From contig OZ059896.1 of the NCBI GenBank assembly GCA_964057225.1, positions 8,928,001-8,992,000 on the forward strand: a stretch of DNA of 64,000 nt, given 5' to 3'. Positions 22,005 to 47,028 of the stretch are shown here, piece by piece; the stretch's first letter is position 1, and each line of letters begins with the position of its first letter. Below the pieces are notes generated by a model, which did no database searches, had not been told where the DNA came from, and saw nothing but the letters and a program-made list of their open reading frames with translations. The translations under genes and the position numbers were made by a program. Source of the DNA: Auanema rhodensis (taxonomy: Eukaryota > Animalia > Nematoda).

Positions 22005-22153
22005 TTTTCCTGTTCAAAACGACGAAGAACTGAACAAAGTGATGTCTTGATTATAATTTTTTAATATTATTTTCATATTCTCACTGTATGTAGAATCTGA
22101 TTACAAATATAATTATGAATTTATAATGTTTTCTTTTAGCTCCATTTGTGAAC

Positions 22154-23426
22154 ATGAGGAATGGAGGGGAATCCCATTTCTCTCTTGATGACTTTGTAAA
22201 GCTTGAGAAAATTGGAGAAGGTGCTTCATCATTTTATCTTAATGCCTATGATATTTTTTCAAGGAACATATGGTGTTGTTTACAAAGGTCGTAATAAGAA
22301 AACAAGTCAAATGGTGGCTATGAAGAAGATTAGACTTGAAAGTGAAGATGAGGGTGTACCTTCTACAGCAATTAGGGAGATCTCCCTTCTAAAGGAGCTA
22401 AAGCATCCTAATGTTGTTGCTCTAGAGGATGTAATCATGCAGGTATATAATCTATTTATGTGAATTTCTGTTTGATCCAATCCGTTTACAGGAGAACCGT
22501 TTGTATCTTATTTTTGAATTCTTGTCTATGGATTTGAAAAAATACTTGGATCAACAACCAAATGGGCTTAACCGCGATACTGTTCAAAGTTACTTGTTCC
22601 AGGTAATACAAATTACTGTGATGATGTTTTTAATTTTACGTTTTAAGATTTGCCAAGCAATGTGTTTCTGTCATCAGCGTCGTGTAATTCACAGAGATTT
22701 AAAACCTCAGAATCTTCTTGTTGATGGAAAAGGAGCTATTAAATTGGCTGATTTCGGCTTAGCTAGAGCTATTGGAATTCCTGTCAGAGTTTACACCCAT
22801 GAGGTAAATATTCAAAATTATTTTGATTGAGGTTAATCGAATATATTAGGTTGTAACTTTGTGGTATCGTGCCCCTGAAATTCTTCTTGGTGGAACTCGA
22901 TATTCAATGGGAGTCGATATGTGGTCGATTGGATGTATTTTCGCCGAAATGGCATCGAAAAAGCCTCTCTTCCAGGGAGATTCCGAAATTGATGAATTGT
23001 ATAAAATTTTCAGGTTTGAGTTTATTCCTTATTTGACATTAATATAATGTGTATGGTTTAGAGTTTTCGGTACACCAACTGAGGAAAATTGGCCAGGAGT
23101 TACAGCCTTGCCTGACTACAAATCTACCTTCCCCAAATGGAGAGGAAAACCATTAACTGAAATTATGGGAGATTATATGGACGACGATGCTCTCGATCTT
23201 TTGAAGGTATATATTATCCTAATTTAATTCAGTTAGTAACCTTATTTAGGCTATGTTGATCTATGACCCAGCTTGTCGAATTTCTTCGAGAAAATCTCTT
23301 ACTCATTGCTACTTCGATGATGTAATTTTTAATAATAATTATAACTATGTAACATTATTCTTTTTTTAGGTGGATACATCTCGCTTGCCAGCCGGTGATT
23401 ATAGAGGCCAGCTTCAACTTAACTAG
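22154..23426 (+). CDS. cdk-1: Cyclin-dependent kinase 1, 8 coding exons
   Basis: [67 protein letters not shown] and GDSEIDEL. Seven GT-AG introns of ~40-50 nt. Stop TAG at 23424-23426. Confidence 0.98.
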
Positions 23427-23691
23427 ATTGAATTATCCTCTTGATGACTTCATTAACATAATCTCACTTTTATAGATACTCCATCTCTGCTTTAGAGTAT
23501 TATATATTTTGTACATCCGTTGTATTTTAGCTTCTATCTAATGAAATTATAAATACCTTAACACTCGTACTCGGTTTGATTTGATGTAGTTTTAACTTAC
23601 ATAAAAGGAGAGCACCAGTCATCTTGCTGTTTACTATGTTTATCTTTAGTTCAGTAGCATGAAGTCTTTGTTTAGAATAAAAAATAATTTA

Positions 23692-26600
23692 TTACATGTC
23701 TGATTGAAATAGTTGCACTGCAAATTTTACAAGAAGAATTTCAGTATTATTCCCTGATGTACCTAAAATATGACATAACAACTTCCAATACGGTTCAAAC
23801 ATACCGGTTCTGAGTTGCATTTTTTTTGTGATAGGACCGCGCAATTTTGAAGTTTCGTTTATAAGCTCTTTAAGGCTTACTTTAGCTTGCTCTATATGTT
23901 CAAATATAAAATAAATATTTAGAAAATAACTAATTACCTAATACAGGAAGATCCGGTGAAAAAACTCTTTTCTGATAGAGAGCTATTTGTAAAGAGCAAT
24001 CAAACGATGAAAAAGGAAATTGACACGTTAGTTGCAGATCATTTTTCGATAGATCAGCGTCGATAGTTTCTATGATAGGACCAAGACTTAAGTGAAATAA
24101 ATGCTGCAAAAATATGATATATTGGTTAGAAAAGAAGACAAGTTGACTCACTGGAGGAGATCCTACAGTTTTTGCATTAATATTTTGAACAGATAGGATT
24201 TCTACAAGTAATCTACCTTTCAAATTCTGGGATACAGTTCGACGATTCTACAAAAATGAGATAAATTTTAAAATTCACTTGGAGCAACATTTTCTATTTC
24301 AGATATAGCAATTGCATGAAGATCAATGGCTTGCTGAATCTCCTTCGTCCACAGTTTCGCAGCATTTCGAGAATGACATCGCAGATGTACTGTGTCTTCA
24401 CCTGAAACACACGAAAAGGCTAATTGGCAAGAAATTTGTTTTACCGTATTGCAAACTGATATGAGTATCACTTTCCTTGTTAGGCACGATCATTAGCTTT
24501 TGCAATAAATATGGTTGTTTATACACGGTTAGTTTCACATCTGTAGTCCGCGAAACTTTAAAGCTATCAGGCTGTAAATAATTTTAGAAAATAACAAACA
24601 TTCTTGCAAAAGTTGCCTCATTTATAGTTTCATCTGGAGTACATAGGAGAAGAAAATCATTGAAGAGGAGGGCAACTAATAATTTACCACTTCTGGCTTT
24701 GTATATAACACCAGAATGCAAGAACGATCTGTTACCCTATATAATTTATGTTATTCGTTTATAATTTTTGAAACTAACCAATGAACGAGTAAGTGAAGTA
24801 AATTCAATAGACGGATTCATATTCAAACAACGAATGTGCTGTTGTGCCCAGCACAGCAATGCTACGGTATCCATCTCTTTCACTGCCTGATTCACTTCAG
24901 CAACAAGCGCTCGAAGTAACTGTAAAGCTGCATCCAAATCCTAAACAGTTATACTAGGTTACTCCAATGTTAAATTTTGAATATACCTGTTGCTCATTCG
25001 AATACTGAACGCTACATTCTTTCAGCATTTTCTCGACCAATAATGGATATCTTAATATCTGATGTTAAGCATCATGAGGGTTTATGTACCTAGTAACACG
25101 TCCAAGAGGAATCATTAAGAAATAGTTCAAAGTCATTCCTCGAGCATGCGGAGAAGCACAACATTGTGCATATAAAGCTCTTGCTTCAGGAGATTGTAAT
25201 AGCTTTGGAATAGTTTCAAGAGCAGCTTGTTGATTCTAAATCCATATACAGAATTTGACATTCGTAATTCTTAAATACCTTACAGAATGTCGTGAAAACA
25301 GATAAAGAGCTTATCTCAGCCAAAAACAATGATCCTACAAATTATTCAGTACTACACATCAATATTTGCCAATATGTTACCAATAGACTCATTTCGTTTC
25401 ATCCTTGTTAACATTTTCTTCGATTCATCTATTAATTGATCCCAATTAAGAAAGACGTGATCAAGTTCTGTCTTTTTAACTACATTTATCAGATTTTGAT
25501 AAAATAATTTTTTAGCCAATACTAAATCACCCAGATAGCGTTCTTCAGTAGTGATCAACTCCTTAAATCCATTGAATTTCTAATGCACGACGCACTTCTA
25601 TTTCACTTACTTCTTTCAATTTCAAGTATTTCTCTGTAGGAACAAACGTGTCCATTGCCGGAGGCTCCTCATAAAGTGCAGGGATTGGAGCACTCTGTGT
25701 ACTTGGTCAGTTACGTTTTCTCTTTATGTATTACCTCATATGTACCGGGTGTAGGAGGGAAGTCATATATATTACTTTGATGAGATTTACGATCTATTGA
25801 AGTTTCCAAAGGCGGCAACTCATACAAAGAAGGTGGCTCACTATATAGTGCAGGTGCCAAGCTTCAAAAACAAAAAATAAAAGTCATTTTCAAAATTTCC
25901 CGAATTATGCATGTTCATGCACTCTTGATTAATACTTATCCATAAAAAAACATGCAATAATCTTGTTTAAACATGAAATGCTAGTGTTATAAAGTGGATA
26001 GGCCAGATAGAAAATAGTGACATTCTCAAAAGAATTAAATGAGAGAATTGAAGTATAAAACATGCACTATGAAAGTTATCACGCAAGCCACCACACAACA
26101 AGTAAATTGATTAAAATGAGATGATTCTTAAAAATAATTTTATTATAAAAACATTTGCTCGATAAACTACTATAAACTATGCAAATTCGACTATTATTGC
26201 AAAACATTACAACGGCTGACTCCGATGGCTTAACTTACAGATACGGAAAGATCTAGACTACAAAGTAAGAAATTACAAAAACTTTTAGATTCAACATTTG
26301 CCGAATAGGAAGTACTGGAACATGTGTGGTGGGCGTGAAAGTGATTAACTTAGTAAAGTGTGAGGAGAGCTCTTAAGGATGACCAGAAATCAGATTGTGA
26401 ATCAAGCCGAACTTTAAGAGCTTATGGAATTATTATGCATATGACCATATTTTGCAGAGGAAGTTAATAAATATGAATCTGTACAAAACAGTATATTGTT
26501 TTCGTGAAGGAAAACAAAAGGAAGATGGACGTAGGAATGTTGAAAACTAGGTTGGTGCAGAAGTGAACGTAAATGGAACGTTGTAAGCAGTTGGGGAAAA

Positions 26601-29600
26601 AAAGAAGAATTGAGCTACCTTAGCTGAACGTAGCTCGCAGGGAAGAGTCCTTTCTGAGTTGGATCAGTGGCTTTATGCCCGGTCCACCATTCGGCATCAT
26701 CTTTGTTGTCAATCTTAACCAAAAATATAAAAAGCAAAAATAAAGATTAATTTACAATTATTAGATCTCCAGCAATGAAAGTCAACTCATCAGCTTGACC
26801 AGCTGAATAATCAAACAATGCAGAAGCAGTCACTTCATTTGTTCCGGAACTGCTTTCCTGAAATTACCTTGTTCATTAAATTCTCTATAAACATTTAAAC
26901 CTCAACGGGAACAACATAATCTCCAGGGAACCATCCAGCAACTGGATTACCATCACGAACAGTTTCACCTTCCCACCATCCAGAATCACTCTTTTCTCGA
27001 ACCGATATCTCATCACCAACTCGGACAGTCAATTGATTGTCAGCCGTAGCATCAAAATCAGCAACAACTCTCACACGACAAAGAATAGTGCATTGTGGTG
27101 GTGATTGAGGCTGGGAAGGAACAGGAGCTTAAAATTAATGAATAATTCTCCAATTTTATTGACGGTACCCTACCAGATTCTATTTTTTCTACGTAATTAG
27201 CTGGGAAAATTCCTTCCTTTCCGTTGCATCGTCCTTTCCACCAAGACTCATTCCTAAATATGAAATAGTTCTTAAGTTCATATATTAATTTATCATACTG
27301 TTCCAAAACTAAAATTTTTTCTCCAACTGTTAAAGAAAGATCAGTTGCCTCGACAGCTTCAAATTCATACATGACTACATACCACTCACCAGGTGTATCT
27401 TAAAATATATTTTTCAAAAATTCCAATAATTCATATTCTACCTTTGGACGGTGATTTAGGAGATGAAGCAGCTATGTTTTGAATAGCTGAGTTAATGGAT
27501 GGAAGGGTAGCCGAAGAAATAGAAGCTTGACGAGAATTGACATAGCTTGGTTGAGGAGTTGCGGGAGAGGTCTGCGTAGGAGTAGCTTTATCAAATGATT
27601 GAGTGAAAGATGCTGGCTTTGATGGTGATTGAACTTTGACATAGCTTTTAGGGAACCATCCTACAGAACCATCGCTCTTTTTTCCACACCATTTCATCTC
27701 TTGTTGTTTGATAACCTAAAACATGATCTTCAATCTAATCAGATTATCCGAATAACCTCAATTGTATCTCCCTTAGCAAAAGACAAGTCTCCTTCATTTC
27801 TTGCTTTCCATGGGAACTGAGCAACACATACACATATCACTGACTCCGAGTTATTCAATTGTTCTGAATCATGAATAAATTATAAAAATTACACAATTAT
27901 TTAATACCATCAGTAAAACTAGATGCAATATTTTTTACGACAGCTTCTTCAGGAATTCTGTCTAAAGAGGGAGAAGGGGTAACGTTAGGTGGCATATTTT
28001 GTATTGGCTGGGCGATTGAAGAGTTAACCGAAGCGATAGGTTCAGCAAACGCTTCAGGGAACCATCCCACCTAAACAGATTATGACAAAGAATATAATTG
28101 AGGTTTACAAACCTTTTCCTTGATTTGACCAGCTCTCCAACCAGGTTCTGAAGCATGGCCTTCAAACACAAGAATGACATCTCCTGGTTGAAAAGATAAC
28201 TCGTCTTCGGTGCGAGCAACAAACTCGAAAATAGCTCTATATTTAGTTGTTCCAGTGGTTGTAGCATTAGGTAAACTGGTAGTCATGCCATCTTTAATGA
28301 AATTTTTTTTGAAACGAAGACTAAGGAAAATTTACTTGTTTTTAGGTCACTATGACCCGAGCTTAGTGAGGTTGTCATCACAGATTGTTTTGATTCTTCA
28401 AAAGGTGCAGGAGGTTGGGCAAATGATCCTCCTGCTTCATTGAGTTTTGCTCGAGCTTGCCCTTGTAAATTATGAAGATTTGTTAAAATTTTACGATACT
28501 CTTCTCTTAGTTTAAGCAACTCTGATCGCTTTCCCTCATAAAGACTCTTTTTCTGAAACACAATTTAAAGAAAAATAATCATGAACCGATGGAGTACCTC
28601 AACACAGAGCCGTGTTTGATTAACAGTTCTTTCTTTTGATTGTTGCAATTGCTCTCTCAAACTTTCCACAGCTGATTTGGCAATATCACGACTTTTAATT
28701 GTATTTTCAAGTTCCGATTTACGAGCTGCGGTTTCTTTATTGGCACTTTGAAGTTGTAGAAGTTGATGAGCCAGTTCTTGAGCTTGAACGCTAAGCTAAA
28801 AACCATTTAGTTAACTTTTTTGTTATCTTTGAAAAATTATACAGCTTGATTAGCTATTTGTAAGTCCTGAATAATTTTGATCTTTCCATCTCGGCTTTCC
28901 CTCATTTTTTCAATAGATTCAGTGATTTCAGCAATTTTATCTCGAGCCTTAAAAGAAAGTTATAAGTCTGAGAAAATATGAAATTGGCATTACAGCAGTA
29001 ACATCATTGTTCAGATCACATGTCTTCTCATCCAATGCTTGCAATTGGAATCCTAACGTTTTCTGTCTCTGTTGACGTTGAGCAGATCTTTCCATTTCTT
29101 GCTGTTTTTGATTCTGAGCACGAACAAGTTCTCTATGCCTTCACTCAGAATAACTACCTGTAGAGCTTTAAGTCGTGCTTTTTCCATTTCTATCAATCGT
29201 TGTTTCTCTGCTTCTCTCCTAGCAATCTCACGTTCAGCTTCGCGAATCTTCTCTTGTTCCAGACGTGCTTCTTCCTGCATCCTGAATCGCTCTAAAAAGA
29301 AATATACAATTGAAGATATGATTAAATCCAAAACACCAACCTAGCTCAAGTTGTCTTTCAGCTTCTCTCTGTCGTTCTTTCTCCAAACGTTCCCTCTCCC
29401 GTTTTTCCATTTCTTCTCGTTCTCGTTTTTCTATCTCTGCTCTACGTCGATGTTCCTAACACATCATTGGGTTATTTAAGTTACTGCAAGAGAATAGAAA
29501 CCTCTTCCATAAGAATTTGTCTTCTACGTTCCAGTTCGGCTTGGCCTTTAGCAAAGTTATCCATACGCTTATCTTCGAAAGTTTTGGGAGCTGGACTCTT

Positions 29601-30727
29601 TTGCGCAGGTGGAGCACCAGGCTCTAGCTATAAAACATATCAAAATAACAGTAACTAGTTTTAATTTAAATACCTGTGGGCTGTTATTAGCAGATCGAGA
29701 TAAGCCGCACATTTGAACTAACTCGGGAGGAACAGAGTCAGGCAGAGCATATCCAGCCTAAAAAAATATGTGAGCTCTGAATAGTGAAAATATCGCACTT
29801 TGCTCATATCTATTAGATGCATAGCAATGCAGAATTCATCCACATTTAACTTTCCATCTTTATTAACATCGGAAAGCCCCCAAATGTGAGCTAACAACGG
29901 GGTAGGTAATCCAGACATACCCAGAGCACTTCGTCCCGCTTGCCCTGTGAGAAAACCGACTCTTTGCTAAAATGATTAAGCTCATGAAAAAAACAAAAAA
30001 ATTTTACAACCTTATCCAACTGATTGAAATGTTGGCTATATTTTAATTTATTATTATGAGGAATAGTCCAATTGCCGCATTGCTTACCGCCTCCCAAAAC
30101 ACCCGTGGGAGTACCTAGAAATAAATGCTCATCAACTCAAAAATGCGTTTTTGAAAAAGTTACTTGGCACTGGTGGGCGACCGGGTGGATTGTGGCCAGC
30201 ACTAGAAGGATAGCTGGGCATTGATTGTTTCATAGGAGACCCATAGCTCATTGAAGACATATTCATTACTGGAAAATTATAATATTTTGGAAACTAGAAA
30301 GAAATATTACCATTAGGAGTTGACATGTTCATCATTGGATTTGGCCCCATATTCATAGGAGCAGCTTGAATGTTATAACCCCCATTCATACTTGGAATCT
30401 GCAGAAGAGAAGGTGGTAGGGTAGGAGGTAAAGACGCTCCTGCTATGCAATTTCTAGTCAGTCTCATAGCGATGGAGAATTCACACTCATTTAGCATACC
30501 ATCTTTATCAGTATCAGATAGAGCCCACACCTTCAATGTTTGAATATTATAGAGGATATGAAATAAGTTTGAACCTGAGCAAGAAGCTGTGGAGACAAGT
30601 TACTCTTCATCAATACAGTTCTAGCTGTGTTTCCATCGATTTTTCCCATTTGAGGATTCAATGAAGAAAACTGAGCTAGGTTAGATTGATGTTCGGCAGG
30701 AGTTACCTCCCACATTATTTGACTCAT
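23692..30727 (-). CDS. itsn-1: Intersectin, long isoform: EH-EH-coiled coil-5xSH3-DH(RhoGEF)-PH-C2
   Basis: Two EH domains (VWALSDTDKDGML, IWGLSDVNKDGKL), an E/R/K/Q coiled coil and five SH3 domains. An in-frame splice across 26618-25862 then leads to DH (ELITTEERYLGDL, IPLGRVTRYPLL, VNQAVKE), PH (LFNDFLLL, KLWTKEI) and C2-like (GRLLVEIL) domains. Stop TAA at 23692-23694. Confidence 0.88.
26615..30727 (-). CDS. itsn-1: Intersectin, short isoform (EH-EH-CC-5xSH3)
   Basis: SH3E ends PASYVQLR followed directly by TAG (26617-26615) if the donor at 26618 is not used. A candidate AATAAA lies at ~26144-26139 inside the 757-nt intron. Confidence 0.85.
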
Positions 30728-31113: not shown

Positions 31114-31306
31114 TTCTAGAAGGAAAGGTTAAACGACTCAAAACTTTAGAATGTAATAGATAAAATATAAAGTAATAATCTGAATATTTACAGAATTATG
31201 AGATACTTTGTTATTCGTATCGTTAACTAGCTTAAGAAAACATTTACATATCCGATCCGGTTAATACTACAATTTAATTAAATAAAAATATTAATAAATT
31301 GTTTAG

Positions 31307-32039
31307 TTATGGTCTTCCTCGGTTCGGATGACCAGCATCAGTCCTTTTAGCTGGTGGTTGACCACCACCACCTCCGGCATTAGGGTTAAAAGCAGGCGGC
31401 CGTTTGGAACCGGAAAAACCACCTCTACTAGCCGAATTTCTTCTCGGGTCTCCACTTGATACCTTAACATTACCATATTAAAATTGCAGAAAGATATAAT
31501 AGAAAAACCTCTCCATCTTCAGGAGGGGAACCTTTGCGTGCTCGTTCATTTGCGGCATATTGGGCATTATATTCACTGATATTGGGAACTTCACTATATA
31601 CCATGAAAAAATCTCCTAATCTCATACATTCTCCATTTCTTCCACAACTTAGTGTGAGGGATCCCTTTAAGTATAATCATTACTTTCAAATTTACTAAAT
31701 ATACGTACTCTGTGAACATTCGTGTACCCGTTTTTAAGTCTAATGATATCACCAGGTTGAAAAGCTTCAATGAGATCAGGGCTACGAAGTGATAAAGTTG
31801 CAGATCCGGTGGGGTCAGCAACTTTTAATGTCTGTATAGTATCGCCATTCATTGTACGAAAATGTTGACCTAGATAAAAACTATGTAGTCCAAATGTGGG
31901 ATTTGTTATCAGTCTCTATATATATAAACAAACCTAATTCTAAAACTATGAATTGAATATTAACACCGGTCATTTGTGGAAGTAATTGATGAATTTTAAC
32001 ATATTCAGTACTTTGTTGATGAGGAGGTACAACTGACAT
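31307..32039 (-). CDS. nabp-1: SOSS complex subunit B / NABP (OB-fold ssDNA-binding protein), 4 exons
   Basis: VNIQFIVLELG, TLKVADPTGS, FQPGDIIRLKNGY and LGDFFMVYSEVPNISE match the hSSB1/NABP OB fold. Gly/Pro/Arg-rich tail. Stop at 31307-31309. Confidence 0.92.
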
Positions 32040-34450: not shown

Positions 34451-34531
34451 ATTGGGAAAACTCAGGAAAAGAGATAAATATGGAAAAGTGAATAAAAGGA
34501 TGAATTATTTTTGTATTTTATAATTGGAATA

Positions 34532-47028
<12,497 letters not shown>

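What the first reader, a model, noticed from the sequence alone, without database searches (positions are those of the whole stretch)
23692..26620. Nematode intersectin keeps a DH-PH-C2 long isoform, switched by a splice donor overlapping the short-form stop codon
Seen: SH3E ends CTA AG|GTAG. Read-through gives AGG TAG (Arg-stop, short form). Splicing from 26618 to the AAG acceptor at 25862 restores frame (AG+C = Ser) into a series of exons encoding DH, PH and C2-like domains with no stops. This 757-nt intron is the only long one in a gene of ~45-nt introns and contains an AATAAA. Knowledge: vertebrate ITSN-L is a Cdc42 GEF made by alternative splicing, whereas C. elegans ITSN-1 and Drosophila Dap160 are described as short-form only. 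Inference: this lineage retains a regulated short/long switch (intronic polyadenylation versus splicing) linking endocytosis to CDC-42 signalling, which cannot be studied in C. elegans.
Basis: partly seen in the sequence, partly recalled or inferred. Interest (0 to 1): 0.8.

Follow-up and report, generated by a model that had tools for sequence, protein, structure and literature searches.

The report
Nematode intersectin short/long isoform switch
This worm's intersectin gene makes a short endocytic scaffold and a longer version with a Cdc42-activator tail, by either ending or splicing the RNA at one site; the finding is real, but the long form is already annotated in many other nematodes.

Summary
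On the minus strand the SH3E exon ends CTA AG|GTAGCT at 26619. Read-through gives Arg-TAG. A 757-nt intron leads to 14 open exons (25861-23692).

Single exons match Pfam RhoGEF and PH_13. In the PDB, the two exons that matched anything hit only intersectin chains. The tail is a divergent C2, shown on the sister species' ortholog.

Spliced RNA contigs from four runs of one study show three pieces:
- Common exons that stop exactly at 26619.
- An unspliced piece running to about 26060-26160, just past an AATAAA. This is the short form.
- A spliced piece over all the long-form exons.

The 26619^25861 joint row was not displayed. Depth arithmetic and the count of hidden joints both imply it.

The same stop-on-donor layout occurs in Auanema sp. 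JU1783, Dictyocaulus and Anisakis. Caenorhabditis ITSN-1 ends at the same residue position, and C. remanei has no tail within 8 kb downstream.

Novelty is low. Long EH-SH3-DH-PH intersectins are already annotated in at least 14 nematode species, including the sister species, and reviews already record DH-PH loss in Caenorhabditis and Diptera. What is new is the RNA evidence and the conserved composite-terminal-exon mechanism.

Regulation and GEF activity were not tested.

The parts
26619..30727 (-). Exons common to both isoforms: two EH domains, a charged middle region and SH3A-SH3E. The start near 30727 is taken from homology only.
   Evidence: Pfam EH and SH3 hits on exon stretches. Fourteen CT..AC joints in one RNA contig per run, which ends exactly at 26619. 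tblastn of orthologs P0001 and P0010.
26615..26620 (-). Switch point AG|GTAG. The 5' splice site GT is 26618-26617 and overlaps the short-form codons AGG TAG; the stop is 26617-26615.
   Evidence: Sequence. The same layout occurs in Auanema sp. JU1783, Dictyocaulus and Anisakis (AG|GTGA). Strongylid short models end ...YVQMR.
25862..26618 (-). A 757-nt intron of the long form. Its first ~500-555 nt double as the 3'UTR of the short form.
   Evidence: Unspliced contigs run from 26648 down to 26064, 26119, 26157 and 26155 in the four runs. No run covers 26063-25862.
26139..26144 (-). Intronic poly(A) signal AATAAA of the short form.
   Evidence: It is the only AATAAA in the intron. The surrounding block is conserved in the sister species. 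The contig ends lie within 20-80 nt of it.
26078..26101 (-). Perfectly conserved 24-nt GU-rich block just downstream of the poly(A) signal. It is a candidate downstream cleavage element.
   Evidence: Identical in the window and in Auanema sp. JU1783, although synonymous sites are saturated. The function is inferred.
26061..26066 (-). UGCAUG motif next to the GU-rich block, conserved in the sister species. Two more copies lie at 25951-25956 and 25916-25921.
   Evidence: Three of the seven minus-strand copies in the 64 kb window fall within 150 nt. Only the first copy is conserved.
26323..26344 (-). Perfectly conserved 22-nt island in the short-form 3'UTR, of unknown role.
25611..25861 (-). Long-form linker exons L1 (25861-25735) and L2 (25694-25611), proline/tyrosine-rich.
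   Evidence: Open and in phase from the first base. 70-75% identical to the sister species with pN well below pS. RNA depth fits the model.
24779..25561 (-). DH (RhoGEF) domain exons L3-L7: 25561-25381, 25334-25279, 25235-25090, 25050-24987, 24940-24779.
   Evidence: Pfam RhoGEF on L3 (E 6e-7, profile positions 4-61) and L5 (E 3e-3, positions 94-142). All PDB hits for L3 are intersectin chains. The sister ortholog has a full RhoGEF match.
24289..24736 (-). PH domain exons L8-L10: 24736-24617, 24571-24445, 24401-24289. L8 and L9 are separated by a GC-AG intron (24616-24572).
   Evidence: Pfam PH_13, E 2.5e-12, on L8. PDB hits are intersectins only. Depth bins fit only a 45-nt intron here. The sister species has a GT-AG intron at the same codon position.
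23692..24247 (-). C2-like domain exons L11-L14: 24247-24152, 24103-23938, 23891-23805, 23762-23692. The stop TAA (23694-23692) overlaps the AATAAA at 23693-23688.
   Evidence: 72-79% identical to the tail of sister ortholog P0010. Profile comparison of nematode tails with tick and vertebrate intersectin C2 gives probability 95.8%, E 8e-9. The model of the P0010 tail has pLDDT 85, and its top fold matches are C2 domains, including human ITSN2 C2. The RNA joint 23804/23763 is shown.

Best explanation
One intersectin gene (minus strand, about 30727 to 23692) of an Auanema-like rhabditid nematode makes two mRNAs from a composite terminal exon.

Short form: if the 5' splice site at 26618 is not used, translation adds one Arg and stops at the TAG formed by the donor itself. 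The RNA is then cleaved about 500 nt further on, after the intronic AATAAA. The product is EH-EH, a coiled region and SH3A-E.

Long form: if the donor is spliced to 25861, 14 more exons add a linker, an intersectin-type DH-PH module and a divergent C2 domain.

Shown here: the sequence layout; both RNA species and the exon structure; the domain identities; purifying selection on the tail; conservation of the layout in clade V and clade III nematodes.

Inferred: the exact cleavage site and the poly(A) tail; a role for the conserved GU-rich block and UGCAUG in the choice; Cdc42 GEF activity; any tissue regulation.

The layout is probably ancestral for rhabditid nematodes. Caenorhabditis kept the stop at the same residue position and lost the tail.
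For: - Sequence and phases.
- EH and SH3 domains.
- RhoGEF and PH_13 on single exons. Exon hits in the PDB are intersectins only.
- C2 by profile and by fold, on the sister ortholog.
- RNA contigs 100% identical to the window carry CT..AC joints. The common-exon contig (depth 104/94.5/57/55.5) ends exactly at 26619. The unspliced contig (depth 42-46) spans the donor and ends at 26064-26157. The long-part contig has depth 18.3/18.2/13.6/13.6. There are no loose ends. All.
- Depth arithmetic reproduces the exon model in 11 bins across 4 runs. In 8 of 8 tests it needs a 30-nt piece of the long contig on 26619-26648.
- 13 joints were hidden. That equals the 12 small long-part introns plus one more.
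- The sister gene model P0010 joins SH3E to L1 at the same codon.
- Donor-overlapping stops occur in three other nematodes.
- The poly(A) cassette is conserved.
- pN/pS is 0.20 over 526 tail codons.
- The Caenorhabditis C-terminus lies at the same position, and there is no tail in 8 kb downstream in C. remanei.
Against: - The 26619^25861 joint row itself was not displayed. The overlap on the exon side is 30 nt, one below the tool's own criterion for bridging.
- Contigs cannot show poly(A) tails or true RNA ends.
- All four runs come from a single study, and the tool warns that contig depth is a poor measure of expression.
- The donor is not weaker than the gene's other donors, so a simple weak-donor competition is not supported.
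- C2 identity was tested on the sister ortholog, not on the window's own joined product.
Confidence: 0.85

Rival explanations
1. The DH-PH-C2 exons form a separate downstream gene, for example trans-spliced to a leader at 25861 and starting at the in-frame ATG in L2. Intersectin proper would then be short-form only, as in C. elegans.
For: The junction row was not displayed. Some public annotations split the locus: Dictyocaulus has two models, and Angiostrongylus and Oesophagostomum have DH-only fragments. Nematode operons and SL trans-splicing are common (general knowledge).
Against: - No contig carries unmatched letters at 25861 (tables 1 and 7).
- Depth in the bins around 26619-26648 needs a piece at exactly the long contig's depth in all four runs.
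- The hidden-joint count fits the 757-nt skip.
- L1 is under coding constraint from its first base, upstream of any ATG.
- The frame across the junction is kept in long models of at least 10 species.
Confidence: 0.05
2. The unspliced contig is only retained-intron pre-mRNA or DNA carry-over, not a polyadenylated short isoform. The gene would then make essentially only the long form.
For: No poly(A) tail or defined 3' end can be seen in contigs. The contig ends vary between runs (26064 to 26157).
Against: - Coverage stops 20-80 nt from the AATAAA in all four runs, and the last ~200 nt of the intron are uncovered.
- None of the 27 small introns is covered: depth fits exon-only coverage for the 13 long-part introns, and the 14 common-region introns appear as spliced joints in the contigs.
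- The depth of the unspliced piece (42-46) exceeds that of the long part (14-18).
- The AATAAA block and the GU-rich block are perfectly conserved while neutral sites are saturated.
- Short models ending in the same Arg exist in strongylids, and Caenorhabditis stops at that position.
Confidence: 0.07

Closest known systems
Vertebrate intersectin long isoforms (ITSN1-L, ITSN2-L), Cdc42 exchange factors
   Same: Same domain order: EH-EH, coiled region, five SH3 domains, DH, PH, C2. Short and long forms come from one gene. The DH and PH exons match only intersectin chains in the PDB. The C2 fold matches human ITSN2 C2.
   Different: In human ITSN1 the choice is inclusion or skipping of a separate exon 30 (PMC9519902). 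Here the SH3E exon itself runs on into an intronic poly(A) site. The nematode C2 falls below the Pfam C2 threshold. This is a single gene rather than two paralogs. GEF activity was not tested.
Long intersectin gene models already annotated in other nematodes (Auanema sp. JU1783, Haemonchus, Necator, Nippostrongylus, Heterorhabditis, Pristionchus, Syphacia, Dirofilaria, Loa, Anisakis)
   Same: EH, five SH3, RhoGEF and PH_13 in one protein of 1,480-1,950 residues. The sister model uses the same SH3E-to-linker junction.
   Different: These are automated predictions without isoform analysis. No paper in the held library discusses them. The window adds RNA support for both forms and for the switch layout.
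C. elegans ITSN-1 and Drosophila Dap160 (short only)
   Same: Same EH, coiled region and SH3 scaffold. Caenorhabditis proteins end one residue after ...YVEL, the position of the donor-overlapping stop here.
   Different: There is no DH-PH-C2. None was found within 8 kb downstream in C. remanei, and published tables list DH-PH as absent (PMC3645719).
Composite terminal exon / intronic polyadenylation switches, such as immunoglobulin mu secreted versus membrane mRNA (own knowledge)
   Same: A 5' splice site competes with a poly(A) site in the intron that follows it. Read-through gives a shorter protein with a very short unique C-terminus.
   Different: The donor here is not weak relative to its neighbours. 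The factors that set the ratio are unknown.
Cryptococcus Cin1 short and long isoforms
   Same: An intersectin-like scaffold with an optional DH-PH tail, cited as evidence that the long form is ancient (PMC3645719).
   Different: Fungal. It has one EH, two SH3, a WH2 and no C2.

Membership tests
Intersectin, long isoform (ITSN-L) | Two N-terminal EH domains | tested here: met
   Pfam EH on three exon stretches at 30796-29721, E from 2e-4 to 2e-12.
Intersectin, long isoform (ITSN-L) | Central coiled-coil region | not tested
   Only a charged Glu/Lys/Arg-rich translation at 29450-28400 was seen, with alignment to orthologs. No coiled-coil prediction was run.
Intersectin, long isoform (ITSN-L) | Five SH3 domains | tested here: met
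   SH3 hits on exon stretches for SH3A, B, C, D and E. The sister ortholog has five matched stretches.
Intersectin, long isoform (ITSN-L) | DH (RhoGEF) domain of intersectin type | tested here: met
   RhoGEF on exons L3 and L5. The seven PDB hits for L3 are all intersectin 1 or 2. The sister ortholog has a full-length RhoGEF match, E 1e-24.
Intersectin, long isoform (ITSN-L) | PH domain following the DH | tested here: met
   PH_13, E 2.5e-12, on exon L8. The PDB hits are all intersectins.
Intersectin, long isoform (ITSN-L) | C-terminal C2 domain | tested here: inconclusive
   No Pfam C2 hit or PDB sequence hit on the window's exons or on nematode orthologs. The tail profile matches tick and vertebrate intersectin C2 (probability 95.8%). 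The sister tail, 72-79% identical to the window's exons, folds as a C2. The window's own joined tail was not folded.
Intersectin, long isoform (ITSN-L) | SH3E and DH-PH-C2 on one transcript | tested here: met
   Depth arithmetic in 8 of 8 tests, the hidden-joint count, no loose ends, and the sister model. The joint row itself was not displayed, so this is a strong inference rather than a direct reading.
Intersectin, long isoform (ITSN-L) | Exchange activity on Cdc42 | not testable with these tools
   Needs a biochemical assay.
Composite terminal exon / intronic polyadenylation switch | Unspliced transcript ending at a poly(A) site inside the intron | tested here: inconclusive
   Contigs span the donor and end at 26064-26157, next to the only AATAAA, and the cassette is conserved. 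Contigs cannot show a poly(A) tail.
Composite terminal exon / intronic polyadenylation switch | The same donor also spliced to downstream exons | tested here: met
   (inferred junction).
Composite terminal exon / intronic polyadenylation switch | Isoform ratio changes between tissues or conditions | not tested
   The four runs come from one study. The long share of contig depth is 0.23-0.30, which the tool calls a poor measure.

The most novel reading that the evidence does not exclude
The stop-on-donor composite exon is the ancestral short/long intersectin switch of rhabditid nematodes. It is set by factors that bind the perfectly conserved GU-rich block and the adjacent UGCAUG just past the intronic poly(A) site; for UGCAUG the candidates are FOX-1/ASD-1-type proteins. 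This would give a neuron-enriched Cdc42-GEF isoform, as in vertebrates but through a different exon architecture. Caenorhabditis would have frozen the switch in the short state by deleting the tail.
Probability: 0.25. Interest if true: 0.5.

Novelty: new member of a known kind. Interest (0 to 1): 0.3.

Why it matters
Reviews treat invertebrate intersectin mainly through C. elegans and Drosophila, both of which are short-form only. This locus, with the database survey made here, shows that most sampled nematode lineages keep the Cdc42-GEF tail: strongylids, Heterorhabditis, Auanema, Pristionchus, filariae, ascarids and oxyurids. Caenorhabditis is the exception.

The locus also shows how one splice site yields both forms, and that the C. 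elegans stop codon sits at the old switch point. In practice, the link between endocytosis and CDC-42 through intersectin could be studied genetically in Pristionchus or Auanema.

This is an incremental gain. It does not overturn anything known.

Tried and rejected
- **Weak-donor idea.** The SH3E donor scores 8.1 bits, rank 24 of 28 in this gene. It is not weak, so the idea was rejected.
- **Stop overlap as a statistical signal.** Half of the gene's donors would give an immediate stop in this phase. The overlap is not remarkable by itself.
- **Alternative introns in the PH region.** A 24-nt GT-AG or a 36-nt GC-AG intron at 24572, and a 31-nt intron at 24248, all fail the RNA depth bins.
- **C2 by sequence.** Exon L12 and the nematode tail profile found nothing in the PDB at E up to 10, and there was no Pfam C2 hit.
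- **Big search with a 60-residue DH exon.** It found only five proteins. It was too short to reach arthropod or vertebrate relatives, so it says little about absence.
- **DNA look-ups that failed.** Necator, Dirofilaria, Nippostrongylus and C. bovis loci were not on record.
- **UGCAUG beyond the Auanema pair.** Only one copy is conserved in the sister species, and placement is not consistent in Dictyocaulus or Anisakis.
- **Papers.** Rose et al. 2007 is not held. No supplement is held for the Dbl survey. The one 'intersectin' hit in a Pristionchus paper was the word 'intersecting'.
Full report
**Observation**

On the minus strand the last SH3 exon ends ...CAG CTA AG at 26619 and is followed by GTAGCT. 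Read-through gives AGG TAG, that is, Arg then stop. The next acceptor, TTGAAG|C, puts an exon start at 25861, so the intron (26618-25862) is 757 nt. AG+C restores the frame.

I built a model of 14 exons: 25861-25735, 25694-25611, 25561-25381, 25334-25279, 25235-25090, 25050-24987, 24940-24779, 24736-24617, 24571-24445, 24401-24289, 24247-24152, 24103-23938, 23891-23805 and 23762-23692. Each exon was translated on its own in its own phase. None has an internal stop, and the phases chain correctly to a TAA at 23694-23692. The other 27 introns of the gene that I could check are 39-49 nt long. The intron holds a single AATAAA, at 26144-26139.

**What the gene is**

Upstream exon stretches give Pfam EH hits (two EH regions) and SH3 hits for five separate SH3 domains. 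In the tail:
- Exon L3 matches RhoGEF (E 6e-7, profile positions 4-61).
- Exon L5 matches RhoGEF (E 3e-3, positions 94-142).
- Exon L8 matches PH_13 (E 2.5e-12).

Against all PDB sequences, L3 hits seven chains and L8 five chains, and every one is intersectin 1 or 2. The DH-PH module is therefore intersectin-type and not just any RhoGEF.

The last four exons gave no Pfam or PDB sequence hit. They are 72-79% identical to the tail of a stored ortholog, P0010 from Auanema sp. JU1783. A profile of six nematode tails matches a profile of tick and vertebrate intersectin C2 domains end to end (hhalign probability 95.8%, E 8e-9). An AlphaFold model of the P0010 tail (pLDDT 85) finds C2 domains as its best structural matches; human ITSN2 C2 ranks second and has the highest identity. 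The tail is thus a divergent C2. This was shown on the sister protein, not on the window's own joined product.

**RNA evidence**

Four runs from one study hold the region as contigs that are 100% identical to the window and carry CT..AC (GT..AG on the minus strand) skips of 41-49 nt. They are therefore RNA. Three pieces matter:
1. A ~3.2-kb contig over the common exons (depth 104/94.5/57/55.5). Its last 95 letters lie on 26713-26619, so it stops exactly at the donor, as a graph-based contig does at a branch.
2. An unspliced contig (depth 42-46) that runs from 26648 across the donor to 26064, 26119, 26157 or 26155, next to the AATAAA. No run covers 26063-25862.
3. A contig (depth 18.3/18.2/13.6/13.6) over the tail exons.

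Only 15 of the 28 joints were displayed, and the 26619^25861 row was not among them. Three indirect tests bear on it:
- The flat per-contig depths reproduce my exon model in all 11 bins in all four runs, and they reject alternative intron choices.
- The two bins around 26619-26648 need an extra 30-nt piece at exactly the long contig's depth, in 8 of 8 tests.
- The 13 hidden joints equal the 12 undisplayed small tail introns plus one more.

The sister species' public gene model joins SH3E to the linker exon at the same codon.

I take the junction as very likely but not read directly. The long piece's share of depth (long over long plus unspliced) is 0.23-0.30. The tool warns that such depths are a poor measure of expression.

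**Conservation**

All 14 tail exons have ungapped orthologues of matching length in Auanema sp. JU1783. Over 526 codons pN is 0.16 and pS is 0.80 (saturated), so the tail is under purifying selection.

The sister intron is 694 nt long and has the identical donor context (AG|GTAGCTCAATT). It shares perfectly conserved islands with the window's intron: the AATAAA block, a 24-nt GU-rich block right after it (window 26101-26078), an adjacent TAGTGCATG, and a 22-nt island in the short-form 3'UTR. With neutral sites saturated, these islands indicate constraint on the intronic 3'-end cassette.

The same stop-on-donor layout is present in Dictyocaulus (ATG AG|GTAGAT) and Anisakis (CTT AG|GTGAGA). Short gene models of Ancylostoma and Oesophagostomum end ...YVQMR. 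Caenorhabditis ITSN-1 proteins end one residue after ...YVEL or ...YVQL, the same position. In C. remanei the DNA reads TTG AAA TAA. No trace of DH, PH or C2 is found within 8 kb downstream, whereas the same queries hit the window at E 1e-69 to 1e-84.

**Mechanism**

The best reading is a composite terminal exon. If the donor is not used, the product is Arg-stop with cleavage after the intronic AATAAA (short scaffold). If the donor is spliced to 25861, the product carries the linker-DH-PH-C2 tail.

The donor is not weak compared with its neighbours (rank 24 of 28), so what sets the ratio is unknown. The conserved GU-rich block and the UGCAUG are candidates. Only one copy is conserved in the sister species, and none is placed consistently in more distant species.

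The overlap of stop and donor is close to chance given the intron phase (14 of 28 donors would do the same). Its interest lies in being used and conserved, not in its statistics.

**Comparison with what is known**

Reviews state that long and short forms arise by alternative splicing in vertebrates. Their tables list DH-PH as absent in three Caenorhabditis species and in Diptera, and present in Apis, Nasonia, Acyrthosiphon, Hydra and Ciona (PMC3645719; PMC3753573). A survey of Dbl-family GEFs reports ITSN as lost in Diptera and Lepidoptera and does not list it among nematode losses (PMC5499878). Human ITSN1 switches by inclusion or skipping of a separate exon 30 (PMC9519902), which is a different architecture from the one here.

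Protein searches show long EH-SH3-RhoGEF-PH models already deposited for Heterorhabditis, Necator, Haemonchus, Nippostrongylus, Auanema sp. JU1783, Dictyocaulus, Parelaphostrongylus, Pristionchus (two species), Syphacia, Dirofilaria, Loa and Anisakis. All five named Caenorhabditis species in the hit list have short models without RhoGEF. I found no paper in the held library that discusses the nematode long form or its switch.

**Organism**

Exons are 62-89% identical at protein level to Auanema sp. JU1783, and the introns align. Other notes of the scan call this genome Auanema-type. I take the window to be a sister species of JU1783 but did not identify it further.

**Verdict**

Regulation, the poly(A) tail and GEF activity remain untested. 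Novelty is low, because the long form is already annotated widely in nematodes, including the sister species. The new elements are the RNA support for both isoforms, the conserved stop-on-donor composite exon across clades III and V, and the finding that the Caenorhabditis stop sits at the former switch point.

**Left out**

Noticed in passing
window 24572-24616 (minus strand): A GC-AG intron (GAG|GCAACT...TTACAG, 45 nt) inside the PH domain. It is the only intron length that fits the RNA depth bins. The sister species has an ordinary GT-AG intron at the same codon position (L001 7885-7926).
   Followed up: partly
window 22130-23690 (plus strand): A convergent CDK1/cdc2-like kinase gene. Its RNA contig ends at 23669-23689 (AATAAA at 23676-23681), while the intersectin long mRNA ends near 23671. 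That mRNA's stop TAA overlaps its own AATAAA (23693-23688). The two 3' ends abut or overlap by up to about 20 nt.
   Followed up: partly
window 26323-26344 (minus strand): A 22-nt island in the short-form 3'UTR that is perfectly conserved with Auanema sp. JU1783 although synonymous sites are saturated. It could be a binding site for a small RNA or a protein. Its function is unknown.
   Followed up: no
window 24248-24288 (minus strand): An intron with an unusual donor, AAT|GTTGCT (41 nt). RNA depth bins support it over the better-looking GT ten bases downstream.
   Followed up: partly
window about 34500-39300 and 31300-31900 (minus strand): From the ORF translations: a ZEB/zag-1-like zinc-finger homeobox gene and an OB-fold SOSS-B/NABP-like gene lie upstream of intersectin.
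   Followed up: no
L004 12740-12760 (C. remanei): The Caenorhabditis itsn-1 stop reads AAA TAA GTTTTT at the position where other nematodes have AG|GTAG or AG|GTGA. This may be a remnant of the old donor. About 7 kb downstream of the stop carries no called gene.
   Followed up: partly
L003 6990-6996 (Anisakis): In Anisakis an AATAAA lies only about 20 nt after the donor-overlapping TGA. This suggests a very short 3'UTR for the short form there.
   Followed up: no
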